64,000 nucleotides of DNA from Mobula birostris (taxonomy: Eukaryota), in NCBI RefSeq assembly GCF_030028105.1, contig NC_092384.1, positions 3,825,665 through 3,889,664 on the forward strand, given 5' to 3'. The notes under the pieces were generated by a model that was given only the letters and a program-made list of their open reading frames with translations, made no database searches and had not been told where the DNA came from. A program made the position numbers and the translations under genes. This document shows positions 1-60,804 of the stretch, one piece after another; positions within the stretch are counted from its first letter, which is position 1, and each line of letters starts with the position of its first letter.

Positions 1-659
1 CTGCAATATAACAAGCAGATTTAGAAATGCCAATCGTCTTGCAGTAATGTCTAATCCCATTGCGCTTTGATTTATTTAAATAATTTCGGAATGTTGATAT
101 TGCATGCGCATTTGTGTACAGGATTCGGGCTGTAAGCAATTTATGAGCAAGAGAGAATAGAAATCGGGCAAGTGCAAGCGGAGTAGACATTAGTTTGAGT
201 GCGCCAGTGTTTAAAGAGGCTTTAGCTCATTAGTCTTGGGCGAACTAACGTATCTGGTGAGTTTAGAAACGGAGAATGTAGAAACTTACAGCATATTACA
301 GGTCCTTCTGCCCACAATGTTGTGCCGACCATTTAACAGTCTAGAAACTGCCTGGACTTTCCCTGGCGCATTGCTCTCTATCTTCCTAAGCTTCATGCAC
401 ATATCTAAAAGGCTGTTAAAATGCCCTATTTTAGCCGCGTCCATCACTGTGGCCGGCAGTACATTCCACGCACACACCTTTCTCTCTGTGTGAAATACTT
501 AGCCTGGGCATTTCCACGGGACCTGTTTCCAAGCACCTTAAAACTATGCTTCATCGTGTTAGCCCTTTCAGGCCTGGGAAAAGACCTTTGGCTATTCACG
601 ATCAATACCCCTCATCATTTTTTTTCTTCTTATTTGTTCATTCCTCCACGGTTAGGACA

Positions 660-3510
660 TAGTAGTGCAATGGGAATGGCTCCAGGGGCAGTGTTTTACA
701 TTGTGTTTGGGATGTAGGAGGTCTTGGATACCCACAGTCTCGCGGATGAACATATGGGCACCAGGTGCACCGAGTTGCTGAGAAAACGTATTAAGGAACT
801 GGAACTGCAACTCTGTGACGTTCAAATCACACTGAAGAATGAGGAGCTGTTAGATAGGAACTACAGGGAGGAAGTCACTTCTATGTTGCAGGAGTCAGGG
901 AACTGGACACTGTTAAGAGAAGGAAGACAAATGAACAACCAATGCATAGTAAGCCTGCGGCCGTTTTTTTTCCCCCCAATAATAAGTACACATATTCAAA
1001 TACTGTTAAAGGCAACGTCGGCTAGGAGTGAGCCACAGTGACCGGGTCTCTGGCACTAGCTCTGCTGTTGTATCTCAGAAGAACAGAGAGGTGAACAGGA
1101 CTGCAGTGCTGATAGGAGATCCCACAGTCAGAGAGGCAGAGAGGCGATGCTGTTGGTGTGTTGGAGACACCCGGAATGCATGTTGCCTCTTCACTGACAT
1201 GATCATCGATGTCTGAGATCGGGCCCATGGCATTCTCAAGGACGACTGCGCGGAGCCAGATGTCTTGGAGCACATTGGCACCAATAAGATAGATGACAAA
1301 GTCAGGCGGTCCAGAGGTGCAAATTTAGGGAATTGGGTAGAACGCTGAAAACAGGACCTCCCAGAAAGTGATCTCTGAATTGCTGCCTGTGCCACGTGCA
1401 AGTGAGAATAAAAATAGGACGATTTGGCAGGTGAATGTTGTGGCTAAGGAACTGGTGCAGGGAATATGGGTTCAGACTTATGGTCATTGGAATCTCTTCT
1501 GGGGTAAAGGGACAGGTTACACATGAAACCAAGGGGTCCCATAATCTTGCGGGTAGGCTAGTTAGAGTTGATCTGGTGTAGTAAGGATGCGGTCTACAAG
1601 TCACAACGGGAGAAGGAAAATGCAACCAGAAGTTAAATGTTGCAAGAGTCATGGAGGATTTCAATATGCAGGTAAATCGGGAAAATAAGTTTGGTTCTGG
1701 AATCCAAGAAAGGAAATTTCTAGGAAATCTACGAGGTGGCTTTTTAAAGCAACTAGCTATTAACCATTTCGAGCAACTAACAGGAAAATTAACTATTCTG
1801 GACTGGGGGTTGTGCAGTTAACCGGAATGATGAGAGAGCTTAAGGTAAAAGTACTCCTGTTGGACAGCTGTTATAATATACCAGAATTCACGCTGAAAGC
1901 TAAGCTAAAGTCAAAGGCATTGCAAGGCAATTACTGAGGCATGAGAGAGCAGTTGGTCAAAATCATTGGAAAAGCAAACTGGCAGGAATGACGGCTGAGC
2001 AGTAAAGATGAAATGCCTGGAAGCAAATTGGAAAGTACAGGATATATATCCCAAAGTGGAAGAATCATTCTGAAGGCAAAATGGCACAACTATGGCTAAC
2101 AAGAGAAGGCAGAGATAAAATCCAAACGGAGGTCAAACAATGATAATCACTGGGTAATTAGGAAGATTGGGAAACATTTTAAAAGCAGCAGGAGGCTACT
2201 AAGAGGTAAGCAGGCTAATACTATTAATGAGGATATTTTAAGTTTCTTCAATTGCAGAATTTGAAAAACAGAATGACTATGTGATCAAACAGGCCGGAGC
2301 TAGCATGTTTTCCTCAAGGGAAACACTTGTCTGCCAAATCTGTTATGACTTTTTTGAAGAAGTAACAAGTTGGAAAAAGAAAGAAGACTCGGTTGATGCT
2401 GGGTACTTCGATTGCTAGAATGGCTTTGACTGCACCACACATGATTCTGCTGAACAATTTAAGACTCCATGTTAATACAGGAAATATACTAGCATGGATA
2501 AAGTAGTGGTTAATCGGCAGGAGAAAAAGAGTGGAACAAAGGGAACCATTTCTGGTTGACTACGGTTGACTACTGGTGTTTCACAGGGGTCTCTATTGGG
2601 GCCACATTTTGTACTTTATATGTCAATGATTTCGGTGACAGAATTGATGGCTTTGGTTCAAGATTTGCCGACGATATGAAGATACGCATAAGGGCGAGTT
2701 GTTTTGTGGAAGTGGAGGGGCTACAGAAGGACGTAAGTAGATTATGAGAATGGGCAAAGAAGGAGAAGGTGGTATACAGTGTCAGCAAAATGTACAGTCA
2801 TCCACTTGGTTAAAAGAAATAAAAGAATGAGTATTTTCTAAGTAGAGAATAAATCAAAAAAGAAAAAACTGAGGGGTAGAGCGACTTGGGAGTCCCTAAT
2901 AGTTAATTTGCAGGTAGAGTCTGCGGTGAGCAAAGCAATTTCAATGTTGGCATTCATCCCAAGAGGAGGGGATAAAAAAAAAAACGAGGATATAATATTG
3001 AGACTTTATATAGTACTGACGTGACCTCTGTTGGTGTATTATGACCATGAATGGGCCCTTTATCATAGAAAGACTGTGCTATGACTGGAAAAGTGTTCCA
3101 AGGAAGTTCAGCACAATGTTTGCAGGATTGAACGGCCTGTTGTATGAACAGCAGTTGATGGCGCTGGGCCTATATTCACTACAACTTATTGAAAATGATC
3201 GAATGGTGAAAGGGCTTGATCGAGTGGATATGGATAGCATGTTTCCGTTGGTTGGAGAGCCTAAGGCGAAAGGTCACAGGGTATTTTTAGAACAGATGTG
3301 AGGAGGGAATTTCTTCACCCAAAGAGTAGTGAACCTATGGAGTTCGTTGACACAGGTGGTGCTGGAGACCAAATGTTTACCTATATTTAAGGCAGAGTTT
3401 AATAGTCTTTTATTGGTCAATGGATGAATGGAAACAGGAAGAAGCAGGTGATTGGGGCTGAGAGGCCTAATAACCGAGTTCTGTTCCTAAATCTTATGGT
3501 CTTATGCATT
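660..3510 (+). mobile_element. Degraded near-full-length CR1-type LINE with ORF1 (zinc-finger/coiled coil plus SGNH-esterase-like region) and ORF2 remnants
   Basis: ORF1-like peptides RCTELLRKRIKELELQL and VLIGDPTVREAERR..CCL, HIGTN. RT-like NDFGDRIDGFGSRFADDMK at 2556-2747. The 3' tail ends in cttatggtcttatg. Many stops and frameshifts. Confidence 0.85.
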
Positions 3511-4410
3511 GATTGTTGAGTTCGTCAAACATTTGGTATGTGCTAGTTAATTATACTTTCCACCTTGCAGAAACGACTGATTTGCCTTTAATTTTCCTTT
3601 TGGAGGATTAATAACAATATTGATTTCATGTCCATTGTGGCGCAACAACGCCATAATTTGCCTCTCTTATCATTTTGCCGTTAATTTAGGTTTGAAATAT
3701 CAGTGTGAAATATCTTGCAGCTGGTTTATTTCTAAACCGTTACAATTTATAACAGTATGGATTGTGTTACCCCACTAATTTGTGGCGACCATTTGTAGAT
3801 AAACAAAATAGCTGGCAGCACATTTGAAAAAATATCATTTATTTCAATAGAAAAGGATTACATGTAAATTGAAAGCTATTTCCAATCTGTTTGAGTAATC
3901 ATTTTAATTTCTTTTCGAGTGGTTGGCGTCACGGACAATGTATTAATTGTCAAACCATAGATGCTTCTGAACTGTAGAAGAAATTAAAAGCTTTCTGGGG
4001 TGGAGATACATATAGACCAGGTTTCCTTTCCTGAAAGCTGGTAGATTTGATTTAACATTAATGAGCTTCAATTTGCTACATTCAAGTATATTTAATTAAA
4101 ATTGTTGCGGAAAAAAAATTCTCAGGAGCAGCAGACAGAATAGATCAGGCCGACTCAGAGAGTTGTTTCAGATTAGATTAATCCCTATTTATCCAAACAG
4201 TCTTAAATGCTTACACAATTAGAATTTAAATTGATTGAATTAATCTCTATAAACAGCATTCCAGGCAAGTTTCTTCCTGTGCCTCGGAACATGTGAAAAT
4301 AAGATACCAAAGAATCAATTATAATCACTGCTGTAAATGGTGATTTCAAATTTCGGCTATTGCACCAAAGGCCCTTTCTTTCTTTCTCTCTTTCTTTCTT
4401 TCTTTCTTTT

Positions 4411-4555
4411 TGCTTTCAGTTAGTCCTGACGAAGGGTCACGGCCCGAAACGTCGACTTTACCTCTTCCTAGAGATGCTGCCTAGCTGCTGCGTTCACCAG
4501 CAACTTTTATGTGTGTTGCTTGGAATTCGAGCATCTGCAGCTTTCCTCCTGTTTG
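4411..4555 (+). mobile_element. Penelope-like element terminal repeat fragment, following a (TCTT)n microsatellite
   Basis: ttagtcctgacgaagggtcacggcccgaaacgtcgac...gatgctgcctagctgctgcgttcaccagc...gcatctgcag matches the PLE-derived end I recognise as abundant in elasmobranchs (from recall). It contains a hammerhead core. Confidence 0.7.
4422..4457 (+). ncRNA. Minimal type I hammerhead ribozyme motif (Penelope-associated)
   Basis: AGTC(4422-25) | CTGACGA(4426-32) | A | GGG..CCC stem II (4434-45) | GAAA(4446-49) | CG | TC (cleavage after C4453) | GACT(4454-57). Stem I AGTC/GACT is complementary. Stem III is reduced to the palindrome ACGT. Confidence 0.7.
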
Positions 4556-5204
4556 CGTTAAGAACCTAAATTAGACGCATGGACTTTTCTGCCATATTAA
4601 ACCGTGGCGTTCTCTCTTCATATATGCTCTGATACTGAAGGAACACATTCTCTCAGAATACTTCGGCTGGTAACGAATAAATGACATGCATCCCAGACAT
4701 GTAACAGTGAAAGTCCATCTCCCATTGTAGGAAATTTACGCTCCTCACATCTGCGCACAGTGTCTACATGCTGCAGTGTCCCAAATATGAAGCTCAATTC
4801 GGAATACAAGTAGCTGGAAAGCAGCCTGCTACTGATTAAATATTATCACTTCCAAATCGGAATCAGAATTAGATTCAGGTTCAATATTACTGGCATATGC
4901 CGAGAATTTATTGTTTTGAGGCAGCATTGCGTTGCAATAGATAATAAATGAAAAAAAATAAACACTAATTAAATAGTGCAACAAGAGAGCAAACATAGGG
5001 AGGCAGTGAACATGAGGTCCGTGTCCATTCAGAAATATGGAACAGCAAAAACGTTAAGTGTGTCTGTCAAGTCACTTAAACATTCCCGTTGACGGTAGCA
5101 ATAAGACGTTGGAATGCCCTGTGTGATCCGGATACTTAATGATCGATTCTGTTTCTCTGTGGAAACGACTTTTGAAGATGTGTCGATACTGGAGAGGCTC
5201 GTGG

Positions 5205-8200
5205 CCATCAGACAATCGACCATAAGACACAGGAACAGAATTAGGCCATTCAGCCCATCGCGTCTGCTCTGCCATCCCATAATGGCAGATCCCGCATCCC
5301 ACTCATACACATGCCCCCTCGCCATATCCTTTGATGTCGTAACCGATCAGGAATCGATCACTCCGCGATAAATACTGTATATCGGCGGTGTTGGCCTCCA
5401 CTGCAGTCTGTGCAGAATATTCCACAGATTTACCAGTCTTTGGCAAAACAATCCTTCCTTACGTGTGTTCTAAAATTTCACCCCCAGTTTTGAGACTGTG
5501 CCCCCTAGCTCTGGATACCCCCACCATGGGAAACGCTCTCTCCAGATCCACCATACCTAGTCCTTTCAACATTAAGGAGGTTTCAATGAGATCCCAAGTC
5601 AGTCTTCTACATTCCGCTGAGTACAGGTCCAAAGCTACCAAACACTCCTGATATTTAAATCACTTAATTCCTGGAATAATCCTGTACTCTTTCCAATGAC
5701 AACATATCCTTACCGAGATATGGGGCCAAAATTGGATTTCCCTTGATACAAATGTCAACATTGCAATTATCTTCTTTACCACAGACTCTACCTGTAAATA
5801 TACCTTCTGGGAGTCTTGCACGAAATCTCCTAAGTCCTTCCGCCACTCCGATGAGTGAAACTTCTCCGTATTTAGATAATAGTCCACATTGTTGTTTCTT
5901 TTACCAAAATGCATTATCATACTTTTCTCAACACTGTATTCCACCTGCCATTTTGCCCATTCTTCTAATCTGTCGAAGTCTTGCTGCATCCGCATTGCTT
6001 CTTCAGCACCACCTAATCCTCCATGCATCTTTGTATCATCCGAAACCTGTCACAAAGCCAACAATTCTATTATCCAGATCAATGATAAATATTGTGAAAA
6101 GTAGTGGTCCTAATACTGACCCTTGAGGAAAACCAGAAAAAAACCCCTTTTATTCCTACTCCTGCCTCCTAACTCTCAGCCATTCCTTTAGCAATGCCAG
6201 TATCATTCGGTAAGCCATAGGATATTGTTAGGTAGCGTCAAGTTTGGCAAGTTATCAAATGCCTTCTGAAAATCCCAGTAAATGTCATTCACTGCCTCTC
6301 CTTTCTCCACTCTGCTTATTATATCCTAGAAGGATTACTACAGGTTTGTCAGGTAAAATTTCCCTTTATAGAACCCCTACCAACTTCGACTTATTTTATC
6401 TTTGGTCTCCAAGTACCTCAAACCCTCATCCTTAATAGCAGACTCTAAACATTTCCCAACAAGTGCGGTTAGGCTAACAGGCGTATAATTTTCATTATTT
6501 TGCATTCCTCCATCCTTAAGGGATTGGATAACATTATCAATCTTTCAGTCCTCCGGGATCATGCCAGAATCAAGTGATTCTTGAACGATTACTAGCAACG
6601 CATCCGTTATGTCTTCAGCAACCTCTCTCAGGACTCTGGGACTTACCCACCATGACACCTTTCAGACTCCCTCGCACGTTTTAACTTTGTAATAGCATTG
6701 GCACTCACTCCTGCTCCCTGACAATCACAGCCCTCTGCCAGACAGTTAGTGTCTTCCACAGTGAAAAATACCCATTCGTTCATCTGCGATTTCGTTGCCC
6801 GCAATACGATCTCACCAACATCATTTTCAGTGGCCCAACATCAACTCTTAGCTACCTGTTACCATTATATAACCGAAAAAAACAATTGGTATCCTGCTTT
6901 ATGTATCATACGGGATTGGGGGAGAGGAGCTGTCGCTGGAAGCGGACCCAAATGCAAGACACAGGCACTGAAGTACAAGGATCTGGACACGACTAGAGAC
7001 TAGAGTTAGGGACGTGACTGGATGCAGAGAAGGAGCTGAGACAAGAACACAGACTTGGGATAGGACATTGACGAGGCAAGAGGAACCAGGAATAGTAGCC
7101 TGAGCCTGGACAAGGACCCAGAACCTGGGTCTTGACGCGGACTCGGACCCCGAAAATAAGCGAGGACATGAATTGGTTACAGGACTGGAAATGGCTTGTG
7201 TTCTTCATGGCTTGTGTACTTCATGAGTGGGCAATTCGAGGCGAGGACAAGAAGAGGCTTGTGCTTGGACTCCGAGCCAAAGACTGGACAAGGACCCAAA
7301 ACCTGGGTCTTGACCCGAACTCGGACTCCGGAACTAGGCGAAGACATGATGTCGTCTTAGGACACAGGACTAGGCGAGGCTACAGGACAGAACCAGCGAC
7401 TCCTGGGCAAGACGAGAGAACTCCAGTACAGGACGAGGGAACTCCAGCACAGTACAAAGCACAAGGACAGGACGAGGCACATGGAAAGGACGAGAACACA
7501 AAGCCTTGACTTGTACAGGATGAAGTTCTTGGACGTGGCTTGGACAGGACGAGGCACTCTTGGGCTAGGCCAGGTACAAGGCCAGGACGAGACCCCGAAG
7601 TCTTGTCTTGGTCTTGGGAGGCAGGATCGCAGAGCCTTGGTCGAGGGAGACAGGAACGCAGAGCCTTGGACGAGGAAGAATAGGAACATAGGTCACAGAC
7701 CCGTGACCTCTCCTTGGGAACAGGACGTAGATCCGGGACTCATGCACAGAATGCTGAATACGACGACACAGTTCCCAACACTAAGTAGCACGAAACGGCC
7801 AGACATACCTAGCGAAGGCGTGGACACAGATACGGTTTCCAACACAAGGCAGCGGCAAACAGCCGGACCTTACTAGCGAAGGCGTGGACACAGAAACAGT
7901 TCCAAGCAATGAAAGACAGTTCCTTATGTAGGCACAGCAAGGCTCCAGCCTTGCTTTGGCGGTAGAACCTGACAGCGATACAGGCAAGGACGCAGGCGAG
8001 GTTGCAGGCAAGTCTACAGGCCAAGGGGTCAGGCAAAGGTTGCAGGCAAGGCTTCAGGCAGAGGTTGCAGGCAAGGATTCAGGCAGTTACTGCAGGCAAG
8101 GCTTCAGGCAGAGGCTTCAGGCGGGGTTGCAGGCAAGTCTTCAGTCAGAAGGTGAAAGGAACGGAAGGGGACAGTCCATCAAATGAAGCTGAACTCAGGA

Positions 8201-10330
8201 GCTATTTGTGTAGCCAGCCCAAAATCAGAATCATGTGCCTCAATTAAGGCACACAACAGGACAAGGGAAAACTGGAAAACCAGGAATACGGATCTATCGA
8301 CCGGAACGTGAACCAGAATGCAGACTTCACAGACAGGACCATGGCATTATATTATTGTCTAGTGGGCCCTGATAAGTTAACTTTACACTTTTTATAGCAT
8401 TTTATTGTCTTTTGTTGGATTTTAAAAGTTTCCCAATCATCCAACTTTCCACTCACCCTTGTTACCTTATATGCCCTTTCCCTGGGTTTATGCAGTCCTT
8501 AACTTCCTTTGTCAGCCACGCTTGTCTACATTTACCAGTTGAGAACTTCTTGCTCTGTGAGAAATGTCCATCCTGTGCTTTGTGAACTTCAGCCATCTCT
8601 AATATGGGTCATCCCGGCTAGTATCCTCCTGTGTACATTAAGCTCCCTAATAAGATCTGGGTTGTAATACAACAACCAATCTAGGATGGCCTTTCCCGAG
8701 TAGGATCAAGCACAAGCTGCTCTAGGAAGCCATCTCGTAGACATTCATAAATTCCCTTTCTTGCGATCCGGGTCCAACATGATTTTCCCAATTCCTTGCA
8801 TATTAAAGTCCCAAATTACAAATGTGTCATCTCTTATTACACATCTTTTCAATCTCCCTTTGCAATCTCAACTCCACATATTAGCTACTATCTGAGGGCC
8901 TATATAAGATTCCCATGTTGCTTTGTTTTAACCTTTATAGTCTCTTAACTCCCACTACAACGTTTCATCAGTCACTGATCCGATGTCACCTCTTTCTGAA
9001 AATGTAATACCATCTCTTATCAACAGAGCTCACCAACCGCTTATGTCTTCCTGACTGTCTTGTCGATGTAAATTATATCCTCTGATGTTAACCTCCCAAC
9101 TATGGGTTTCATTCAGCCTTGTCGCAGTGATGCTCACAACGTTCTACAGACCAATCATCAAGTGCGCCACAGATTCGTCCACGTTATTCCAAATGTTACG
9201 CACATTTAAATACAGGAACTTCAGTCCTGCATTGTTAATCCTTTTGAATTTAGCCTCTGTGGTACAATGTAACTCTTTGCTCTGTCTACATTTGCACCTA
9301 ATCATTGGCCTGTCCTTACTTATATCCATGTTATGTCCATCATCTACTTCTAAACCTGCTGGCTGATCCACGGCTTAATGATATCCGTTCCCACCCTACT
9401 GACAAAATAATTTAAACCTCTCCCAACAGCTAGTAAACTTGCACGTGGGAATATTGGTTACCGTCGGATCAGGTGCAAACCATCCCTTTTGTAAGATGCC
9501 ACCTGTCCTAGAGGAGGTGCCAGTTATCCAGAAAGCTGAATCGCCTGCTCCAATTATTCAGCCACTCGTTTATAGGTCACTTCATTCTATTCCTACCCTC
9601 ACAGTCGCGTGGTACAGGGAGCAATCCCGAGATTACTACATTTGATGTCCTGCTTCTCAGCTACCTTCCTAACACCCTGTGTTCTTTTTCTCAGCAACCC
9701 ATCTCTTTTTCTACCTACGTCGTTGGTACTAACGTGTACAAGGACTTCAGGCTGTTCACCCTCCCTTACCAGGATATTTTGGACCTGTGCAAAAACATTG
9801 CGGACCCTAGTACCTGGGAGGTAATCTGTGTTTCATTTTCGCATCCACAGAATCGCCTATTTGCCTTCCTGACTATAAACTGTCCTATTACTGCTGCAAC
9901 CCTTTCCAGTTCCATAAACGTTTGACTCACGGGACCAGAATCTGTACCAGAGGCACTGCAGCTGTTGCTTCCCCGCTCCAACAGTACTCCGTATCGAGTG
10001 GTTATTGTTGAGAGGGACGGCCACGGCGGTGTTCTCCACTATCTGACGGTCTCCCTTCCCATTCCTGACCGTCACCCATTTATATGTCTCATGTAGCCTT
10101 GGAGAGTCTACTTCCCTCTAGATCCTGTTTATCACCGCTTCACTTTCCCTAACAAGTCGAAGGTCATGGAGCTGCAGTTCCAGTGCCCTAACAAGGTCTC
10201 TAAGGAGTTGTGTCTCGATGCAACCGGTGCAGATGTGGCCACTGGGGAGGCTGGTAGTCTGCTGGAGATCCCATATATGAGACCCAGAATAGGACACCGG
10301 CTCGGTACACGTACTTCCTATTCTGTTCAG
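5205..10330 (-). mobile_element. Degraded CR1-type LINE(s), interrupted by a solo LTR at 6904-8346
   Basis: Reverse 3' tail (gaccataagac..aggccattcagccc) at ~5215. RT C-terminal peptides DFDRLEEWAKWQVEYSVEK at 5660-6028. Endonuclease start LKFLYLNVRNIWNNVDE at 9144-9371. ORF1 region near 9850-10300. Confidence 0.85.
6904..8346 (-). mobile_element. Solo LTR (~1.44 kb) with internal short tandem repeats
   Basis: Degenerate TGTCA..TGACA termini (tatcat at 6904, ggaccatggca ending 8346). Flanks are TTATG (left) and TTATA (right); the paralogous copy has TTATA on its left flank at 51160-51164, consistent with a 5-bp TSD. It has 11-12 bp gcaggcaag/ttcaggcaga repeats at ~7980-8145. Confidence 0.8.
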
Positions 10331-10479
10331 TGTTCATTCAGAATAAGTAATAAAAAAATCATGGAGCTCATTGCATTTGCAAATTCCTGCAGCTGTTATC
10401 GATCCTACACTGTGCCTCCTCAATACCAGCAGGTGATGCAATCAGATAGCGTGGTCTTCACGGTGCATTTGTAGAAACG

Positions 10480-10900
10480 TCCGAAAGCTATTTTTTGTGA
10501 TCTGCCAAGTCTCTACAAACTCATAATGACATATAGCGTCCGCTATGCCTTCTGTGCAGTTGCATCAAGATGTTACTTCCAGGATACATCTTCAGAGACG
10601 TGGACACGCAGGAATTAAACATACTAAACATTTCCACTGCTGAATCTTTAATGTTGCGTATGTGTTTCCTCGACTTCACCTTTCTGAAAACCACAACAAA
10701 TTCCTTGGTCTTAGTGTCATTAAGTGCAAGTTTGTTGTTGCTACACCACTGAAGAAACTGATCTATCTCACTCCTGTATACCTCCCCTTCACCATCTAAC
10801 AATAGCTGTGCTTAGTCCCACGGTCATAATTGCAGAACGGGACAGTACAGCACTGGACTCTACATGGATCCTTAATGTGTGCCAGTGTTAACGGTCAGTG
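10480..10900 (-). mobile_element. Rex1/Babar-like LINE RT C-terminal fragment
   Basis: ORF 10521-10802 reads GEVYRSEIDQFLQWCSNNKLALNDTKTKEFVVVFRK, typical of the end of this RT clade. Confidence 0.65.
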
Positions 10901-11375
10901 ATAAGTATTTTCGATCTACACTGAATGTGGTGATATGATGAGTAAGTGAAGAGTCCACTTGCAGAAGGACATGCAGAGTTCCAGGTGCTAGAACTTGTTG
11001 ACTAGTACTTTGAATATGATGTGGTTGTATTCTGATAAGTAAACAATAAACAGCAAGCTAACGTAGGTATTTCTAATGTTCAGATGATCCAAGGCCAAAC
11101 TAGTGATAATAGATTAATTGTAGACATATTGAGGCAATTGGCAAATTTCAGCGCGTCGTTCACCATGCTAAGGAAGGAATTGGTTCAGGCCATCACCAAA
11201 CTCTCATAGCACTTCAGCCCGTTAGGTTTGAGTACAACTGGGAGATATTCGTTGAGTCAACTGACCCTGCCCTTCATGGGCGCTCTAATGATCATCGACA
11301 TTTTGAAGTGGTCCCCATCCTGCGACAGTAGCGTTAAGAAAGATGCCTTGGAACATTCCAGCCAAAGGTGATATA

Positions 11376-11590: not shown

Positions 11591-11629
11591 GACTCCCAAG
11601 TCCACTTGCATTTCTGCATTTTGAATTAG

Positions 11630-19055: not shown

Positions 19056-19059
19056 GTTC

Positions 19060-49678: not shown

Positions 49679-51164
49679 GCTCTAAAATGTCACCACTCAG
49701 TTTTGAGGCTGTGCCCTCTAGTTCTCTATTTCCCCCACCTTGGGAAACATTATCTCCATATCCACCATACCTCGTCCATTCACCATCCGGTAGGTATCAA
49801 TGAGATCCCAACTCATTCTTTTCCATTCCACTAAGTACAGGCCCCAGCTGCCAAACGCTCCTGATATTTAACCCTCTTAATTCCTGGAATCATCCTCTGG
49901 ACTCTTTCCAATGACAACATATTCTTACCGAGATATGGGGCCAAAACTGCAGCCAATATTCCCGGCAACCTGACGAATGTTTTACAAAGGTTCAGAGTTA
50001 TCTTCTGGCTTTTATATTCGTTTTCCTTTGATATAAATGTCAACATTGCAATTATCATCTTTACCACGGACTCTACCTGTAAATTTACCTTCTGGGAGTC
50101 TTGCACGAAATCTCCTAAGTCCTTCCGCCCCTCCGATGTGTAAACCTTCTCCCTATTTAGATAATAGTCCTCATTATTGTTTCTTTTACCAAAATGCATT
50201 ATCATACATTTCTCAACATTATATTCCACCTGCCATATTTGCCCATTCTTCTAATTTGTCTAAGTCTTGCTGCATCTGCATTGCTTCGACAGCACTACCT
50301 AACCCTCCATGGATCTTCGTATCATTCGAAACCCGCCACAAGACCATCAATTCTATTATCTAGATCGCTGACAAATATTGTGAGAAGCAGTGGTCCCAAT
50401 ACTGACCCTTGAGGAAAACCAGAAAAAACCCTTTTATTTCTACTCCTGCCCCCTATCTCTCAGCCACTCCTCCACCAATGTCAGTATCATTCCTGTAACG
50501 CCATAGGATCTTGTTACGTAGTATCATGTTTGGCAAGTTATCAAGTGCCTTCTGAAAATCCCAGTAAATGTCATTCACTGCCTCTCCTTTCTCCACCCTG
50601 CTTTGTTATATCCTTGAAGGACTATTACAGATTGGTCAGGTAAGATTCCCCTTGAGAGAAACCACACCAACTTTGACGTATTTTATCATTAGTCTCTAAG
50701 TATCTTAAAACCTCATACTTAATAACATACTCTAAACATTTCCCAACAACTGCGGTTAGGCTACCAGGCTTATAATTTTCATTATTTTGCCTTCCTCCAT
50801 CCTTAAGGGGTTGGGTAACATTTGCAATCTTTCAGTCTTCCGAGACCATGCCAGAATCAAGTGATTCTTGAAAGATTACGAGCAACGCATCCGCTATCTC
50901 TTCAGCAACCTCTCTCAGGACTCTGGGACCGACCGACCATAACACCGTTCAGTTTACCTCGCACGTTTTAACGTTTTAATAGCAGTGACACTCAGTCCTG
51001 CTCCCTGACAATCACAGCCCTCTGCCAGACAGCTAGTGTCTTCCACTGTAAAAACAGATGCAAAATACCTTTTAGTTCATCTGCGATTTCTTTGCCCCCC
51101 AATATCAACTCTTAGCTCCCTGTCACCTTTATATAACCGACAAAAATTGGCATCCTGCTTTATA

Positions 51165-52452
51165 TGTCATATGCGGGTGTGGCGCTGGAAGCGGACCCAA
51201 ATGCAAGACACAGGCACTACAGTACAAGGAACTGGACAGGACTAGAGCCGAGAGTTAGGGACGTGACTGATTGCAGACAAGGAGCTGGGACAAGAACACT
51301 GACTTGGGCTAGGACATTATGCTAGGATCAGGACTAGGAGCCTGGCCTTGGACTCCGAGCCGGAGACTGAACAAGGACCCAGAACCTGGGTCTTGACATG
51401 GGCTCGGTAACCGGAACTAAGCGAGGACATGACGTGGCTACAGGACTGGACATGCCTTGGGTTCTTCATGGCTTGGTTACTTCATGGTTTGGGCACTTCT
51501 AGGCGAGGACATGACAAGGCTTGTTTTCGGACTCCGAGCCAGAGACTAGACAAGGACCCAGAACCTGGGACTTAACTCGAACTCGGACTCCGGAATTAGG
51601 CGAAGACATGACGTGGTCTTGGGAGAAAGGACTTGGCGAAGCTGCAGGACAGAATGCAAGATTCCTGGGCAAGACGAGAGAACTCCAGTACAGGACGATG
51701 GAACTCCAGCACAGGACGACGCACATGGAGAGGATGAGGCATATGGCAGGACGAGAACACAAAGCCTTGACTTGGACAAGACGAGGTTCTTGGACATAAC
51801 TTAGACAGGCCGAGGTACAAGGACAGGACGAGACCGCGAAGCCTCGCCTTGGTCTTGGGAGACAGGAACGCAGAGCCTTGGTAGAGGGAGACATGAACGC
51901 AGAGCCTTGGTCGAGGGAGAACAGGAAGATGGGACACAGAGCCGGGACCCCTCCTTGGAAACAGGACGTAGGGCCGGGACTCATACGCAGAATGCTGAAC
52001 ACGACGAGACAGTTCCCAACACTAGGTAGCGGGAAACGGCCGGAACTACCTAGCGAAGGCGTAGACACAAAATCAGCTACAAACAACGAAAGACAATTCC
52101 TTATCTAGGCACAGCAAGGCTCCTGTCTGCTCCGGCGGTAGAACTTGACAGGCGAGGACGCAGACGAGGTTGCAGGCAGGGCTTCAGGGAGAAGTTGCAG
52201 GCAAGACTGCAGGAAGAGGCTTCACTTAACGCTTCAGGCAGAGGTTGCATGCAAGTCTTCAGGCAGAAGGTGAAGGGAAGGGAAGGGAACAGTCCAGCAA
52301 ATGAAGCTGAACTCAGGAGCTACTTATGTAGCCAGCTCAAAATCAGAATAATGTGCCTCAATTAAGGCACACAACAGGACAAGGGAAAACTGGAAAACCT
52401 GGAATACGGATCTCTCGACCGGAACGTGAACCGGAATGCAGGCTTCCCAGAC
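51165..52452 (-). mobile_element. Solo LTR, paralogue of 6904-8346, with its right end removed by a deletion
   Basis: TTATA|TGTCAT start. Colinear with copy 1 up to ggaatgcaggcttcccagaca, then it jumps to the equivalent of ~8613. Confidence 0.8.
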
Positions 52453-55400
52453 ATCCCGGCTAGTATCCTCCTGTGTACATTAAGCTCCCTAATAAGATCT
52501 GACTTGTAATTCAACAACCAATCTAGGATGACCTTTCCGTAGTAGGTTCAAGCACAAGCTGCTCTAGGAAGCCATCTGGTAGGTATTCAACAAATTCCCT
52601 TTCTTGCGATCCGGGTCCAACATGATTTTCCTAATTCCTTGCATATTGAAGTCTCTTATTACAAATGTGTCATCCCCTTATTACACACCTTTTCAATCTC
52701 TCTTCGCAATCTCGACTCCACATATTATCCACTATTTGAGGGCCGATATAAGATTCCCATATTGTTTTTGTTTTAACCTTTATAGTCTCTTGACTCCGAC
52801 CACAAAGATTCATCAGTCTCTGATCCGATGTCACCTCTTTCTGAAGATGTAATCCCATCCCTTATCAACAGATATCACCAACCGCTTATGACTTCCTGAC
52901 TGTCTTGTCGATGTAAATTATATCCTCTGATGTTCAGCTTCCAACTAGGGGTTTCATTTAGCCATGACTCAGTGATACCCACAACGTTGTACAGACAAGT
53001 GCGCCACAGGTTCGTCCACATTATTCCAAATGGTACGCACATTTAAATACAGGAACTTCAGTCCTGCATTGTTAATCCTTTTGAATTTTGCTTCTGTGGT
53101 ACAATTTAACTCTTTGCTCCGTCTACAGTTTTTACCCAATCATTGGCCTGTCCTTCCTTGCATCCATGTTCTGTCCGTCATCTGCTTCTAAACATGTTGG
53201 CTGATCCATGGCTTTATGATATCCGCTCCCATCCTCCTGACTAATTAATTTAAACCACACCCAACAGCTAGTAAACCTGCACGTAGGAATATTGTTCCTC
53301 GTCGGATCACGTGCAAACCATCCCTTTTGTAAGATGCCACCTGTCCTAGAGGAGGTGCCAGTTATCCAGAAAGCTGAATCGCCTGCTCCAATTATTCAGC
53401 CACTCGTTTATAGGCCACTTCATTCTATTCCTATCCTCACAGTCGCGTGGTACAGGGAGCAATCCCGAGATTACTACATTTGATGTCCTGCTTCTCAGCT
53501 ACTTTCCTAACACCCTGTGTTCTTTTTCTCAGCAATTCATCTCTTTTTCTACCTACGTCGTTGGTACTAACGTGTACAAGGACTTCAGGCTGTTCGCCTT
53601 CCCTTATCAGGATATTTTGGACCTGTGCAAAAACACTGCGGACCCTAGTGCCTGAGAGGCAATCTGTGTTTCATTTTCGCGTCCACAGAATCGCCTATTT
53701 GCCTTCCTGACTATAAACTCTCCTATTACTGCTACAACCCTTTCCAGTTCCATAAACGTTTGACTCACGGGGCCAGAATCTGTACCAGAGTCACTGCAGC
53801 TGTTGCTTCCCCGCTCCAACAGTACTCCGTATCGAGTGGTTATTGTTGAGAGGGACGGCGGCGGCGGTGTTCTCCACTATCTGACGGTCTCCCTTCCCAT
53901 TCCTGACCGTCACCCATGTATCTGTCTCATGTAGCCTTGGAGAGTCTACTTCCCTCTAGATCCTATTTACCACCGCTTCACTTTCCCTAACAAGCTGAAG
54001 GTCATGGAGCTGCAGTTCCAGTGCCCTAACACGGTCGCTAAGGAGTTGTATCTCGATGCAACCGGTGCAGATGTGGCCACTGGGGAGGCTGGTAGTCTGA
54101 TGGAGATCCCATATATGAGACGCAGAACAGAACACTGGCTCTGTACACGTACTTCCTATTCTGTTCACAGTTCATTCAGAATAAGTAATAAGAAAATCAT
54201 GGAGCTCATTGAATTTCATGGAGCTACACCACTGAAGAAATTGATCTATCTCACTACTGTACACCTCCTCTTCACCATCTAACAATAGCTGTGCTTAGTG
54301 TTACGGTCATAATTGTAGAACGTACAGTACAGCAGTGGGCTATAAACGGATCCTTGATATGTGCCAGTGTTAACGGTCAGTGATAAGTATTTTCGATCTG
54401 CACCGAATGTGGTGATCTGATGAGTAAGTGAAGAGTCCACTTGCAGAAGGACATGCAGTGGTCTAGGTGTTAGAACTTGTTGACTAGTACTGAGAATATG
54501 ATGTTGTTGTATTCTGAGGAGTAATCAATAAACAGCAAGCTAACGTAGGTATTGCTAATGTTCAGATGATCCAAGGCCAAACCAGTGATAATAGATTAAT
54601 TGTAGACACATTGTGGCAATTAGCAAATTTCAGCAGGTCGTTCTCCGTGCTAAGGAAAGAATTGCTTCAAGCCATAACGAAACTCTCATAGTACTTCGGC
54701 CCGTTAGGTTTCTGTGCAACTGGGAGATAGTCGTTGAGTCAATTGACGCTGCCATTCTTGGGCGCTCTTTAGATCATCGCCCTTTTGAAGTGGTCCCCAT
54801 CCTGCGACAGTAGCGTTACGGAAGATGCCTTGGAACATTCCAGCCAAAGGTGATATACAGTGGCATGCAAAAGTTTGGGCACCCAATGTCAAAATTTCTG
54901 TTGCTGTGAATAGGTAAGCGAGTAAAAGATGAACTGATTTCCAAAATGCATAACGTTAAAAATGACGCATTTCTTTAATATTTTAAGCAAGAATATTTTT
55001 TTTTGATCTCCATATTTTACAGTTTCAAAATAGCAAAAAAAGGATAAAGTCCCGAAGCAAAACATTGGGCAACGACTCCAAGTCCCTTTGTATTAGTTCC
55101 CCATCCATTGTATTTCATTTGCCACTTTTTTGCCCTTTCCTCCAAACTATCTAAGTCTCTTTGCAGGCTCCCTGTTTTCTCAACACTACCTGCTCCTCCA
55201 CCAATCTTTGTATCATCGGCAAATTTAGCCACAAATCCAATAAACCCATAGTCCACATAATTGCAATGCATCGTGAAAAGCAGCGTTCCCACCAGCGACC
55301 ACTGTGGAACTCCACTGGAAACCGGGAACAGCCAGAACAAGATCACATTATTCCCACTCTCTGTCGATCAGCCTATGTTCCACCCATGCTAGTAACTGTC

Positions 55401-56279
55401 CTGTAATTCGATGGGTTCTATCTTACTGAACAGCCTCATGTGCGGAACCTTGTCAAAGGCCTTCTGAAAATCCAAATAAACCACGTCTACTGCATCTCCT
55501 TTGTCTACTCTGCTTGTAATTTCCTCAAACACTGCAGTATATTAGTCAGGCATGAAATTCCTTTCAGGAAATCATTTTGGCTTTGGCCTATCTTGTAATG
55601 TGCCTCCAGCTACTCTGTAATCTCATCCCCAACAATCAATTACAACAACTTCCCAACACTAACAGGTCTATAATTTCCTTTCTGCTGCCACACACCTATC
55701 TTAAATAGCGGAGTAACTTTCAGAAATATCCAGTCATGCGGTATTATGCCAGAATCTATCGATTCTTGAAAAATCTTATTAATGATTCTGCAGTCTCTGC
55801 AACTACTTCCTACAGAACCCAAGGGTGCATTGTAACACATCCAGGAGACTTATCCACGCTCAGACCCTTAAGCTTCCTGAGCACATTCTCAGTCGTACAT
55901 TTCACTGCACATACTTCACTTCCCTCACACTCTTGAATATCCGGTATACTGCGGATGTCTTTCACTGTGAAGACTGATACAAAATACGCATTCAGTTCCT
56001 CTGCCATCTCTGCGTCTCTCATTAAAATAGCTGTAGCATCAAATATACTTCGACTAATAAAAACAAGCATCACTTTAGCTTTGTTAACCACACTATCGAC
56101 CTGAAACAACTTATCTTTATCTGGGTAAAAGTAGACACCTTGTTAGACCTGTGGTTTTATCCACCAATTGGGCTCAGCATTTCAAGATCTCCTCCTTGTT
56201 TATCAATTCCTGAGCTCATCGTTGTCTAGACGAGTGTAACGATGCCAACGCTTTGTAACATCTTTCTTATCTCTTTCGC

Positions 56280-56740
56280 TTCCATGTAAAAATGACCACG
56301 GTGAGTATCATGACGACCAATTTGGTCCACTGCACTTGGTTCACTCTCCAGAAGTGGCTGCGTGACCTTGGCTTCACTAGAAGAGAGATCAAGTCAACCA
56401 GCAGGGCTGTAGCTGAGGCAGCAGAGAAAGAATCAGCATGGGTGTGGACCAAGTATGTCCAGAGGGGCAGATAGTCAGACAGTGTATACATATCTTGCAA
56501 ACCCTTCAGTGGTTGCATAGACACCTGAAGAGTAGACTATCTGTTGGATGGAAGTGACCAGCAACTCTGAAAGAGGCAGATGCCAAGTTTTTAAGCTCAC
56601 CAGTGGGAGGTGGTGCTTTAGCACTGCTGGCCCACCATCTCGAGGGAGTCTTGATCGTAAGCGGGCCGCAACTCCTGAAGACAGGTGGCAGATCAACTGA
56701 TGATCCCACTGGTGATAGCACAGGACAGTTAACATGTTAG
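56280..56740 (+). mobile_element. 3' fragment of a restriction-like-endonuclease non-LTR retrotransposon (HERO/NeSL-like)
   Basis: ORF 56292-56474 reads LQKWLRDLGFTRREIKSTSRAVAEAAEKESAWVW, followed by a 3'UTR-like segment. Absent from copy 1 at ~12750-12770. Confidence 0.6.
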
Positions 56741-57939
56741 TCCATGTGTATTTTGTAACTCCCTGTAGAAATGTTGCTATTCCCCTTCACAATCTCTGAT
56801 AGCGCAAACCCATGGCCTCATGGTTTCGTCTTTAGTGTCTGTTCCATTTCAGACACTTGTCAAGTACCTCATTTGTTCTTTACTGTCTGTATATTAGATA
56901 CAATAGAATAGTACAGCACAGTACAGACCTTTTGGCCTGCAATGTTGTGCCCACCTTCAAACCCTGCCTCCCATATAAATCCCCACCGTAAATTCCTCCA
57001 TAAACCTGTCTAGTAGACTCTTAAATTTCACTAATGTAGCTGCCTTCACCACTGACTCAGGCACTGCATTCCACGCACCAATCAGTCCCTGAGTAAAAAA
57101 GCTTCCTCTAATAACCGTCCCACCCCTTACCTTAAAGCCATGTCCTCTTGTATTGAGCAGTTGTGCCCTGGCGAACAGGCGCTGGCTATCCACTGTATCT
57201 ATTCCTCTTGATATCTTGTATACCTCTATCATGTCTCCTCTCAACCTCCATCGCTCCAAAGAGTAAAGACTTAGCTCCCTTTATCTCTGATCATAATGCA
57301 TACTCTCTAAACCAGGCAGCATCCTAGTAAATCTCACCTGTACCCTTTCCAATGCCTCCAAATCCTTCCTATAGTAAGGCGACAAGAACTGGACATAGTA
57401 ATCCAAGTCTGCCCTAGAGGAGTTTTATAGACCTGCATCATTACCTCGCGACTCTTAAGCTCTATCCCTCGGCTAATGAAACCTAACACCCCATAAGCTT
57501 TCTTAACTACACTATCTACCTGTGCGGCAGCTTTCAGGGATCTGTGGACATGCACCCCAGGCCCCTCTGCTCCTCCACACTTCCGGGTATGCTGCCATTT
57601 ACTTTGTACTCTGCCGTGGAATTTGTCCTTCCAAAGTGTACCACCTCACACATCTCTTGGTTGAACTCCATCTGCCACTTCTCAGCACACTTCTGCATCC
57701 TATCAATGTCTCCCTGCAATATATGCTCTGTAATTCTCTGTTATTTTAAACCAGGCTTCATATCTCTCAATAACAAAGGGTCAGAAAACCTGTTTGCTTT
57801 GTCTTTTATTCTGACAGGTACATGCAAACGTTGTACTCCCGAAATTTCTGAAGACCTCCCATTCATTTGCCAGAAAATAACCTGAGCCAATACACCCTTT
57901 CTACTCCCGTCTGATAACGTCAGAATTGTCCATTCTCTA

Positions 57940-60804
57940 TGCAACGCCCTGGGAAATGTTTCACCGCTAATGTAATGGTTTCTCCGTGGCGCAGTGTTTG
58001 GGTTATAACTGGAGATAACGGGGGCTTTGAAATGTGCGGCGTCCAATGAGTAAAGAGTTTTTTTTCTTTCTCGTGTGCTCGAGAGTGAAGAAGTTGCGGG
58101 ATTTTGTTCGTCGGAACATGGAGAGAGAAGATGCCAGAACGGAGAGGACCAAACTGTAGACTGGGTGGACTTGGAATGGGGCAGGGAGCCGACGACGCCC
58201 GGGAGAAATCGATGGAGAACAAACGGACGGGAAAATCGTGAGCTGCAACGTGCGCATTAGACTCTTTCCTAAAAATGGGCCCATTTTCTTTTCGTTACTA
58301 GCCCTTCAGTCAAATTAAGAATTATAAAGCTCAATCGTTTAATTGCATATGGTGTACTGTTCGTTATTTCGTAGTATTGACTTCTAACAGGGAAAACTAT
58401 CACTCAACATCCACACAAACGAGATTTCACCACTTTCGCGGGGGCAGCGACTATCTTCTCCTAGACTAACGCAGCCCGCCGAAACTGAGGGTTACAATTG
58501 CGGAGGCATCGTTGCAGGATTCATTTCGTTGAATGTTGTGTGCATACCCTGAGCATTTAACCAGTGGGTTGCGTGTTTTAAGTCTGTTCTAGTTTCGATG
58601 CTGCTGGGTGAAGTGATAGTATTCATCCACTGGGGCAATGCGGGCGTGTTGAGTGGGACAGATATTCGTGCTCCGGATGAACTGTTAATTCACCTGTTAA
58701 GTACTGTTAAAGTTTTGCAGAGCGGAGGTTTGATAAACTGGCGGGCACAGATCTCGTTTCACTGCAGACCAGCTCTGACGTAACGGCAGCGGAGCGGGCC
58801 GAATCACAAGACGAGTTTCCTGTAGCTAGGGTCGGAGATTTCAAAGACAGGGTTCTATCGTTTCTGAGGAGTGAGTTGAAGGAGCGGCCGGAATTGCGTA
58901 TTACAACTGTGGTGAAGAGGGACAGCTCAGGCGGGGGTTTGAACAACAGGAAACACTGCGGAGAGTGAGCCATCGTGTACCTAAGCAGAGCGAGTCGATA
59001 GGAATTCTTTAAAGAAGCCCAGTGAGGGATAGCGAAGGCGGGGGGGGGGGGGGTGTTCGGGTGCATATTTCTAGCAATATATTAAGGAACACCCGAAAGC
59101 AAAGAATCCTGTTTCTTAAGGCTTAATGGGGCCAAGCTCCAGCGTATCGCTACTGATATAAGGCATTTATACCAGAACCATACTTGACACAGAGTCGCAA
59201 GTCACTTTGTTGTACCGATCATTTTACAACCATTTGCGCCATTCAGTGCACTGGATATCTGGGGGCTTAGTGCGGCTGTTTATCCGTATGATGTTTACTT
59301 GTCAGTAAAACTAGAGCTTTCGGAGGCCGATGTGGGAGTGGCTGAGGGGTTTGATACATTACCGCTATGCTGCCCGGACGCCGTTGAGAAGGGCGGTGAT
59401 TCAATTCTTGTGGAGACCTACACTCCTATTGCGATGAGGCTCATGGGATCCTGTAACGAGAAAGCTGAAGAGAGCTTTCTGAGAACGTTGTCCTTTCACT
59501 CGGTGTTTCGAGCTGCTTTTAAGGAAGTGCGTGACTGCATTGGGCCGGATGAGGAATGTAGACGCAGGACTGTGCGGTTCCCCAGTCCAAGCCAATCATG
59601 TTACGGTCCGGGGAAATAGCGAGAGTAATGAGAAGCCCCAAATTTCCCGGAATGCCCGAGGGCGAGGCCTTCTTGGTGGATGCTCCGGAAGACCACGAAG
59701 AAGAGTCGGGAATACCTGCTGTGGTGCTGGTGAGGCCCGAACTGCAGAAGTCCTCGGTTGTACAGGCGAACAAGATGGGAGTGGTTGTCAGAAACACTAC
59801 TGAGAGGGAAGTCATATTCGAGCGGGGGCTGCCCCTGACGCATCTTTTCCCGGAATCGATAGTGCTAGTGTCCCTGTGAGACAAGCGGGGTAGAAACTAT
59901 CTGCAAAGTGGGGAGTGTTGACCGCTGAGTCATTCAACTTCGGGGACTCCCAGGTACCTGCGGGTGAGAAGAACAAGTTAGTAGAGAAGATGTTTTTTTG
60001 CACTGACTAGTTTAATGGGGGTTGTTCCAAGAACTCTCTTCACACTATGCGGGTGACCAAGGACACCCCGTTCAGAGAGAGGTCACAGCAACTGGCTCCT
60101 GCAGAAGTGGAAGACGTTCGGTAGCATTCTGTAAGTTGAAGGAAGCTGAGATCATCATCGAGTCCAGAAGCCCCTATCCGTCACACAATAGTGGTGGCCA
60201 GAAAGAGGAATGGGAAGGTACGGATATGTGTGGACAATAGGACTCTGAACAGGCGTATCGTCTCCGACCAATATACGGTCCCAAGGATCGAAGACGCGCT
60301 GGCCTGTCCGGGTAGTGCGAAGTGGTTTATTGTGCTGGACCTGAGGAGTGGATATTACCTGATCCACATGAGTGAGACTGACAAAGAGAAGTAGGCATTT
60401 ATATGTCCACTGGGATGTTTCAAGTTCGAAAGTCTGCCCAGGGCATATCGTGTCCCCCTGCAACCTCCCAGCGGGTCATGGGGCACTTGAGTTTTCTTGA
60501 AGTATTGGTGTATCTGGATGACTTCATAGTGTGCAGGTCCACCTTGGAAAATCATGAAGCGGAGCTCAGACAAGGTACAGTGCGGTCTGAGTTGTAGGTA
60601 GGGACGAGTGATATGACAGCGGAGGCCTTGCCAGATAGACCAGAAGTACTTCCAGTAGTGTCGAAACATGAAGAGGTAGATGAGGGAATATGGAGGTCTC
60701 AAACATCAGAAGGCTACGGGATAAGCTGGCCTATATAGCACTGGGGAAACGGAGTGTGGCCCAAATTGCTTTGCAAGCTATGTCACTGCCTTTTACACCT
60801 GGGT
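57940..60804 (+). mobile_element. Gypsy element, paralogous copy: 5' LTR 57940-58496, protease and RT remnants, cut by a LINE before the 3' LTR
   Basis: TCTA|TGCAACGCCCTGGG...GAGGGTTACA. ILDTESQVTLLY at ~59180. VLDLRSGYY and VYLDDFIV at 60191-60597. Confidence 0.88.

What the first reader, a model, noticed from the sequence alone, without database searches (positions are those of the whole stretch)
1..60804. ~41-kb tandem unit implies a cluster of VJ-C1 receptor paralogues
Seen: 16.7 kb upstream of the receptor gene is repeated 41,385 nt downstream, starting about 4.8 kb after the stop codon, with identical nested insertions. Copy 2 stops at a position equivalent to 16673, about 970 nt before the ATG, only because a LINE inserted there. 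Inference: the whole gene is the duplicated unit, a paralogue starts a few kb beyond 64000, and another ends just left of position 1. Tandem arrays of paired inhibitory/activating IgSF receptors (SIRP, LILR/KIR, CHIR, NITR) are established. An array of antigen-receptor-like V-C1 receptors in an elasmobranch would be notable.
Basis: partly seen in the sequence, partly recalled or inferred. Interest (0 to 1): 0.72.

Follow-up and report, generated by a model that had tools for sequence, protein, structure and literature searches.

The report
Tandem array of paired manta-ray immune receptors
The window holds about one and a half units of a real tandem array of giant manta ray genes for antibody-shaped (V-C1) surface receptors, where an inhibitory gene sits next to an activating-type twin with an identical binding domain; the layout is familiar from mammals and had not been found described for rays.

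Summary
Window 1-16673 is collinear with 41387-60804 at 80-92% identity. A CR1-like LINE (60805-65353, minus strand) interrupts copy 2, and homology resumes at 65354, matching 16680.

The whole-genome search (Mobula birostris, C19) finds the predicted paralogues. One gene starts at window 66322. A complete one ends at -8025. In all there are 9 V, 7 C1, 6 TM and 6 inhibitory-tail exons of this close subfamily across C19:3.556-3.903 Mb. At least 45 more distant V-C1 pairs lie elsewhere on C19.

The window gene is XP_072135199.1, annotated "SIRP-alpha-like". It has 7 exons: leader, germline-joined VJ, one C1, an uncharged TM, and a tail with ITIM/ITSM motifs. RNA contigs confirm three of its splices.

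New here: the downstream neighbour keeps leader, V and C1 but ends in a unique TM exon with an arginine and a 6-residue tail, which is the activating type. A Mobula hypostoma orthologue has the same ending. Its V exon lies in a 536-bp tract identical to the window gene, inside 82-93% identical flanks, which points to gene conversion.

The array is not on the MHC chromosome or on the PBX/NOTCH-marked paralogons. The scan had noted this family on neighbouring DNA. Verdict: a new member of a known kind, the paired-receptor array.

The parts
1..16673 (+). Copy 1 of the intergenic/upstream segment of the tandem unit. It is transposon-rich and is cut on the left by the window edge.
   Evidence: collinear with 41387-60804 at 80-92%. 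Leftward continuation appears in the flanks.
17640..17694 (+). Exon 1: split leader (MHIFDKLLNLWFLQIVYT), phase 1.
   Evidence: splicing the seven exons reproduces P0001 (XP_072135199.1) exactly.
17940..18260 (+). Exon 2: germline-joined V-J domain, ending ...YYCGVRDWTGTISKGNGTNVIVH.
   Evidence: Pfam V-set E 1.5e-8. One continuous exon. An RNA contig joins its 3' end to the C1 exon.
17864..18399 (+). 536-bp tract 100% identical to the downstream paralogue (window-equivalent about 66547-67082). Read as a gene-conversion tract covering the V exon.
   Evidence: flanks are 82-93% identical and the tract is perfect. V dS = 0 while C1 dS = 0.20 for the same gene pair.
25438..25716 (+). Exon 3: the single C1-set domain.
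   Evidence: Pfam C1-set E 8.1e-15. An RNA contig covers 25437-25550 with no mismatch.
26914..27024 (+). Exon 4: stalk and uncharged transmembrane segment (FILILTGALAACGAIILVLLLLM), followed by RRCRVDRTE.
   Evidence: The TM-to-cy1 joint 27024/27514 is seen in RNA contigs.
27514..27557 (+). Exon 5: cytoplasmic mini-exon (AAENDENLSRYLENQ).
   Evidence: The loose end at 27558 reads into the start of exon 6.
36175..36282 (+). Exon 6: cytoplasmic, carries SPSYADL.
36371..36538 (+). Exon 7: cytoplasmic, carries LMYACV (ITIM) and TEYAGI (ITSM), then the stop codon.
36539..41386 (+). 3' intergenic part of the unit. It matches -8603..-1 of the upstream unit.
41387..60804 (+). Copy 2 of the upstream segment. 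It belongs to the downstream, activating-type gene.
45380..45509 (.). N run (gap or mask). It stands for about 84 nt of low-complexity sequence in copy 1 (4356-4439).
47318..49399 (.). 37-bp satellite, 56 copies, present only in copy 2.
60805..64000 (-). CR1-like LINE (APE + RT). Its 3' tail is at 60805 and it runs on to 65353 outside the window. It is inserted about 970 nt upstream of the paralogue's ATG-equivalent.

Best explanation
The window covers about one and a half units of a tandem array of non-rearranging V(J)-C1-TM immunoglobulin-superfamily receptor genes on Mobula birostris contig C19 (3.556-3.903 Mb). Unequal crossing-over copied a unit of about 41 kb: a 19-kb gene plus about 22 kb of transposon-rich spacer. 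The units then diverged to about 84% identity and picked up private insertions (a LINE and a satellite). The window gene encodes an inhibitory receptor with one V domain, one C1 domain, an uncharged TM and a tail with SxYxxL, LxYxxV and TxYxxI motifs, which are inferred to recruit SHP-type phosphatases. Its downstream neighbour keeps the upstream region, leader, V and C1 but ends in a different exon. That exon encodes a TM segment with an arginine and a 6-residue tail, so it is inferred to signal through an acidic-TM ITAM adaptor. Gene conversion keeps the two V exons identical, so both receptors should see the same ligand with opposite signalling. This is a classical paired receptor. Shown: the duplication, the exon structures, intact frames, the splices of the window gene, the converted tract and the array map. 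Inferred: phosphatase and adaptor coupling, the ligand, and the cell type.
For: Array: searches place 9 V, 7 C1, 6 TM and 6 tail exons of the close subfamily in gene order on C19. Searches show unit-scale collinearity. Gene model: (exact match to XP_072135199.1). Domains. Splices in RNA contigs. Neighbours intact with AG/GT splice sites. Activating-type end: (ag|CAGCCCGG...AARWIQGINLCRILLGLLVITVGIVLIVNYLQSF*). M. hypostoma proteins P0156/P0157 have the same C-terminus. The exon is unique in the genome. Zeta-family adaptor TM exons exist on C7 and C18. Conversion: (536-bp perfect tract); dS is 0 in V against 0.20 in C1; the inhibitory and activating V domains share five species-specific residues in each Mobula species. 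Not an assembly duplicate: about 16% divergence, private insertions, and several distinct orthologous genes in M. hypostoma.
Against: No RNA evidence for the activating-type gene in M. birostris: the listed runs held next to none of its words, which is not proof of absence. The arginine sits near the outer end of the TM, and adaptor pairing is untested. The 536-bp identity could in principle be an assembly or polishing artefact. V-exon dN/dS of 1-2 rests on only 5-9 synonymous differences per pair. Two units are incomplete: gene -2 lacks the ITIM exons, and V 3649169 is a pseudogene. So not every copy is functional.
Confidence: 0.85

Rival explanations
1. Only the upstream region was duplicated, with no array. 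The repeat would be a segmental duplication of non-coding, transposon-rich DNA with no paralogous gene behind the LINE.
For: Within the window alone, copy 2 ends at the LINE.
Against: Homology resumes beyond the LINE at 65354. Leader, V and C1 exons follow it, and further units lie upstream.
Confidence: 0.01
2. False duplication in the assembly: haplotigs or collapsed and re-expanded repeats placed in tandem.
For: There is an N run inside copy 2. The 536-bp tract (17864-18399, over the V exon) and the 292-bp tract (24219-24510) are both perfectly identical between units.
Against: Mean identity between units is only about 84%. There are private insertions: the LINE, the satellite and several indels of 0.3-0.6 kb. 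The 3' ends of the genes differ. M. hypostoma, assembled independently, has distinct inhibitory and activating orthologues. RNA contigs from paralogues differ from the window gene.
Confidence: 0.03
3. The array is real, but the downstream gene is a decaying truncated copy or a decoy rather than an activating partner. The arginine-TM exon would be a fortuitous open frame.
For: No transcript evidence in M. birostris. The exon is unique in the genome. Another unit (gene -2) is truncated.
Against: Leader, V and C1 frames and all splice sites are intact. The exon has a proper acceptor in the right phase. The same 34-35-residue ending is annotated in M. hypostoma in two NAGNAG isoforms, with 31 of 33 residues conserved. 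The V exon is kept identical to the inhibitory gene.
Confidence: 0.12

Closest known systems
SIRP family (SIRP-alpha/beta/gamma cluster of mammals and birds)
   Same: It has an N-terminal V domain with a J-like G strand followed by C1-set domain(s). Tandemly arranged inhibitory and activating members have near-identical V domains. The tail motifs YADL and TEYA[G/S]I resemble those of SIRP-alpha (that comparison is from memory). NCBI names the window gene SIRP-alpha-like. Rat SIRP-alpha and human SIRP-beta-1 give the best TM-scores for the modelled ectodomain, 0.78 and 0.77.
   Different: There is one C1 domain, not two. Identity is about 20%. The activating TM carries arginine near the outer end, not the mid-membrane lysine of SIRP-beta (from memory). 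There is no linkage to a syntaphilin gene, which flanks the human SIRP cluster (from memory). CD47 binding is unknown.
Leukocyte-receptor-complex type arrays (KIR, LILR, chicken CHIR) and teleost NITR
   Same: These are tandem arrays of paired inhibitory (ITIM) and activating (charged TM, short tail) IgSF receptors. They expand by unequal crossing-over, are homogenised by gene conversion, and have fast-evolving ligand-binding domains.
   Different: Their domains are C2/I-type (KIR, LILR, CHIR) or V plus I (NITR), not VJ plus C1.
UrIg / UrIg2 (non-rearranging VJ-C genes of elasmobranchs; PMC12227049)
   Same: Germline-joined VJ exon with a split leader, followed by C1-type domain(s), in elasmobranchs.
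   Different: By the paper's account, UrIg is conserved in V sequence and in number of C domains across elasmobranchs, and nurse-shark UrIg2 has nine C1-type domains; they are linked to the MHC or to the IgH/TCR complex. Here there is one C1 domain, ITIM or arginine-TM signalling ends and many copies, and the genes sit on C19, which carries no MHC class I hit.
Immunoglobulin light chains / TCR chains
   Same: V-J-C1 order. Foldseek's best solved matches for the ectodomain model are antibody light chains (E about 5e-16, 18-22% identity). phmmer aligns the end of V, J and C1 as one stretch to Fab chains.
   Different: No V/J split and no rearrangement. It has its own TM and a signalling tail.

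Membership tests
SIRP family | V-set domain with a J-like G strand at the N-terminus | tested here: met
   Pfam V-set. The exon ends in GNGTNVIVH.
SIRP family | Two membrane-proximal C1-set domains (V-C1-C1) | tested here: not met
   Only one C1 exon lies between V and TM. The 361-aa product has a single C1.
SIRP family | Inhibitory member with cytoplasmic ITIM/ITSM tyrosines that bind SHP-1/2 | tested here: inconclusive
   The motifs SPSYADL, LMYACV and TEYAGI are present. Phosphatase binding cannot be tested with these tools.
SIRP family | Conserved synteny with the SIRP cluster's neighbours (e.g. syntaphilin) | tested here: not met
   Syntaphilin-family genes are on C1 and C3, not C19. This is a single marker, so the test is weak.
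SIRP family | CD47 as ligand | not testable with these tools
   Needs binding assays.
Paired inhibitory/activating IgSF receptor array (functional class) | Tandem paralogues in one orientation with unit-scale homology | tested here: met
Paired inhibitory/activating IgSF receptor array (functional class) | A member with an ITIM tail and a member with a basic TM residue and a short tail that share a near-identical ectodomain | tested here: met
   Gene 0 versus gene +1: V 100% and C1 91% identical. TM exons are FILILTGALAACG... and CRILLGLLVITVG... followed by NYLQSF and a stop. Signalling itself is untested.
Rearranging antigen receptors (Ig/TCR) | Separate V and J segments joined by RAG at RSS | tested here: not met
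   V and J-like strand are one germline exon spliced directly to C1.
UrIg/UrIg2 | VJ followed by several C domains, linked to the MHC or to the IgH/TCR complex | tested here: not met
   One C1 domain. At least 9 close and at least 45 distant copies. All MHC class I hits fall on C6 or the unplaced contig C4593. Linkage to the IgH/TCR complex was not tested.
MHC-paralogous region gene | Linkage to PBX/NOTCH paralogon anchors | tested here: not met
   PBX and NOTCH genes co-localise on C6, C16, C26 and C37, none on C19. Translocated paralogon fragments are not excluded.

The most novel reading that the evidence does not exclude
The C19 clusters could be a cartilaginous-fish-wide, germline-diversified system of antigen-receptor-shaped (VJ-C1) innate receptors. 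In that reading it would be a surviving side branch of the pre-RAG receptor stock, with diversity made by tandem duplication, V-exon conversion and possibly alternative V cassettes (gene -2 has two) instead of rearrangement.
Probability: 0.1. Interest if true: 0.75.

Novelty: new member of a known kind. Interest (0 to 1): 0.45.

Why it matters
Paired inhibitory/activating receptor arrays (KIR, LILR, SIRP, CHIR, NITR) are a recurrent solution in vertebrate innate immunity. Their presence, with concerted evolution of the ligand-binding exon, in a ray places this genomic mode of evolution near the base of jawed vertebrates. The domains involved here are shaped like an antigen-receptor chain (VJ-C1). 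The locus also gives a clean example of an activating gene made by keeping the 5' half of an inhibitory gene and swapping its 3' end. None of the five literature searches returned a description of this elasmobranch family, and databases name its members inconsistently: SIRP-alpha-like, tapasin-related, NCR3LG1-like, lambda light chain-like and CD276 homolog.

Tried and rejected
- MHC linkage: MHC class I exons map to C6 and to the unplaced contig C4593, not C19.
- MHC-paralogon linkage: PBX and NOTCH anchors are on C6, C16, C26 and C37.
- SIRP synteny: syntaphilin genes are on C1 and C3.
- UrIg identity: rejected on domain number, copy number and location.
- Literature: searches for a description of the family found only the UrIg papers and unrelated work.
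- RNA for the activating gene: the listed runs held none of its words, so nothing can be concluded.
- M. hypostoma locus DNA: one isoform was not on record and the other gave no DNA and no coordinates, so array order in that species could not be compared.
The exons at C19:3.556-3.740 Mb are therefore known only by coordinates and identity.
- Variability by region: it is only mildly higher in the C-C'-C'' and CDR3-like loops. I make no claim that diversification is focused on CDRs.
- Solved-structure matches are dominated by antibodies, which are very numerous in the PDB. I took them as a fold-level resemblance only.

Full report
**Observation.** A self-comparison of the window shows a collinear chain of eight blocks. 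These join 2-16673 to 41387-60804 at 79.7-92.4% identity, with bit scores of 1200-2600. The offset begins at 41,385 and grows to about 44.2 kb through copy-specific indels. One of these is a 37-bp satellite of 56 copies at 47318-49399. RT-derived open frames lie in the same order and orientation in both copies (RVT_1 for 16093-16356 and 60140-60391). The transposons were therefore in place before the duplication.

**The N run.** The N run at 45380-45509 is flanked by sequence that aligns to copy-1 positions 4355 and 4440. It therefore replaces about 84 nt of low-complexity DNA in intergenic sequence, and the two sides are collinear. The whole-genome fetch carries letters at that place. I masked them and did not read them.

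**Source and gene model.** The window is G000:C19:3825665-3889664 of a 4.0-Gb genome. A search of 1.8 billion protein representatives with the V exon returned a 361-aa protein with a 100% match. This is XP_072135199.1, [quoted passage not shown]. Seven exons with AG/GT borders reproduce it exactly:
- leader 17640-17694
- VJ 17940-18260
- C1 25438-25716
- TM 26914-27024
- cytoplasmic exons 27514-27557, 36175-36282 and 36371-36538

Pfam calls V-set (E 1.5e-8) and C1-set (E 8.1e-15). The V exon runs without interruption into a J-like strand (GNGTNVIVH), so the gene does not rearrange. The TM segment is uncharged. The tail carries SPSYADL, LMYACV and TEYAGI. Contigs of three public runs of the same species show the V-to-C1, TM-to-cy1 and cy1-to-cy2 splices.

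**Testing the inference.** Six-frame searches of the whole genome were run with the V, C1, TM and tail exons. I also examined 200 kb of fetched flanks. Together they give the following map on C19:

| Gene | V | C1 | TM | Tail | Notes |
|---|---|---|---|---|---|
| a (minus strand) | 3575916 | 3564905 | 3563581 | 3556302 | |
| b | 3602039 | 3613245 | 3614663 | 3622371 | C1 is a split hit |
| lone V | 3649169 | none | none | none | in-frame TGA, pseudogene |
| d | 3701576 | 3709197 | 3710665 | 3720127 | equals P0151/P0002 |
| orphan tail | none | none | none | 3739163 | |
| -2 | two cassettes | present | present | cy1 only | window -66481..-55839; lacks the two ITIM exons |
| -1 | present | present | present | present | window -23282..-8025; complete, 359 aa |
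| 0 | 3843603 (17940) | 3851104 (25438) | 3852577 (26914) | 3862041 (36371) | the window gene |
| +1 | 66623-66943 | 73715-73993 | see below | short | leader at 66322 |

Unit -1 and unit 0 are collinear over 85% of 40.9 kb at 84% identity. The element at 60805-65353 is a non-LTR retrotransposon on the minus strand, with an APE endonuclease, an RT and a (TTTCTATG)n tail. Homology resumes directly behind it (65354 against 16680).

Beyond this close subfamily, V and C1 exons at 28-45% identity occur in pairs at C19:3.14-3.52, 3.93-4.06, 12.6-13.07 and 16.7-17.7 Mb. There are at least 45 V hits, almost all on C19.

**The downstream neighbour.** Homology between unit 0 and unit +1 stops just after the C1 exon (25889/74182). 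No inhibitory TM or tail exon follows. Instead, at window-equivalent 76683-76786, a phase-correct exon (ag|CAGCCCGG...) encodes AARWIQGINLCRILLGLLVITVGIVLIVNYLQSF and a stop. This is a TM segment with an arginine and a six-residue tail.

Mobula hypostoma has annotated proteins P0156 and P0157 (252 and 251 aa) with V, C1 and the same ending. They occur in two NAGNAG splice forms. The exon is unique in the M. birostris genome. Two zeta-family adaptor TM exons exist, on C7 and C18. I therefore read gene +1 as the activating partner of the inhibitory window gene. That coupling is inferred, not shown.

**Gene conversion.** The V exons of gene 0 and gene +1 are identical. The identity spans 536 bp (17864-18399), including 76 bp of upstream and 139 bp of downstream intron. 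It sits within flanks of 82-93% identity. For this gene pair dS is 0 in V but 0.20 in C1.

In a V-domain tree the M. birostris pair and the M. hypostoma inhibitory/activating pair form one clade with 99/98 support. At five positions both members of a species share a residue that differs between the species, and derived states occur in both species. That is concerted evolution of the ligand-binding exon.

**Divergence between paralogue lineages.** V dN is 0.13-0.17, with dN/dS of 1.0-1.95 for the window gene against the other lineages (0.5-1.1 among most other pairs). C1 dN is 0.04-0.11, with dN/dS of 0.2-1.0. The counts are small, so this shows only that V is not under the usual purifying selection.

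**Family placement.** Database names for relatives are inconsistent. They include SIRP-alpha-like, tapasin-related, NCR3LG1-like, lambda light chain-like, CD276 homolog and uncharacterized. Relatives occur in rays and in many sharks.

An AlphaFold model of the ectodomain has mean pLDDT 88.7. Its best TM-scores in Swiss-Prot models are rat SIRP-alpha (0.78) and human SIRP-beta-1 (0.77). Its best E-values are to PD-L1, kappa light chain and CD276. Among solved structures the best matches are antibody light chains. All are at 22% identity or less.

The gene fails the SIRP definition on domain number, having one C1 rather than two, and on a weak synteny test. It is not UrIg or UrIg2, which are reported with several C domains and are linked to the MHC or to the IgH/TCR complex. 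MHC class I maps to C6. The PBX/NOTCH paralogon anchors map to C6, C16, C26 and C37. The MHC-paralogon idea therefore has no support here.

**Verdict.** The finding is real and correctly interpreted. It works like the known paired-receptor arrays (SIRP, KIR/LILR, CHIR, NITR). It is a new member of that kind rather than a member of any named family.

Earlier notes of this scan had already described neighbouring copies as part of a large, inconsistently named shark-and-ray family. They had also described an inhibitory/activating pair in the 12.8-Mb cluster. What this report adds:
- the array map
- the truncated and pseudogene units
- the 3'-end swap that made the activating gene
- the V-exon conversion tract
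- the negative synteny tests

Noticed in passing
L002:9184-L003:2509 region (window-equivalent -66481..-63155; C19:3759184-3762509): Gene -2 has two intact leader+VJ cassettes 2.7 kb apart (dN 0.04 between them) ahead of a single C1/TM/cy1. This could allow alternative V usage from one gene. The gene lacks the two ITIM exons because unit homology stops at -48442.
   Followed up: partly
window-equivalent -41675..-37430 and 98817-103072 (C19:3783990-3788234 and 3924481-3928736): A 4.2-kb block, 92.6% identical between the two places, carries an antisense tail exon of the distant family member P0035 (gene B, minus strand, 85.5-112.7 kb). The upstream copy is an orphan exon sitting where gene -2's own tail should be.
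   Followed up: partly
window 60805-64000 (to 65353) and window-equivalent -5784..-2649: Two copies of one CR1-like LINE, 96.4% identical, are inserted at different sites of neighbouring units. The family is young and was recently active.
   Followed up: partly
C19:3701576-3720285 (gene d, P0151/P0002): Its V domain is only 72% identical to the window gene. Its TM exon differs by one residue over the exon-encoded part (GSRDKF against GSREKF) and its last exon is 100% identical. This suggests a second homogenised tract, this time over the signalling end. NCBI also predicts C1-skipping isoforms (V-TM) for family members.
   Followed up: no
window 24219-24510: A second perfect-identity tract (292 bp) between unit 0 and unit +1, in the V-C1 intron, next to a short tandem duplication at 24050-24396.
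   Followed up: no
window 45380-45509: The whole-genome copy served by the fetch from genomes has letters where the window reads N. I masked them and did not read them.
   Followed up: no
window 27557 (RNA contigs): One contig runs from the cy1 exon straight into a cy3-like sequence (IMQGTEDTLM), skipping cy2. This matches the M. hypostoma protein P0154 pattern and probably comes from a paralogue or an alternative isoform that lacks the YADL motif.
   Followed up: no
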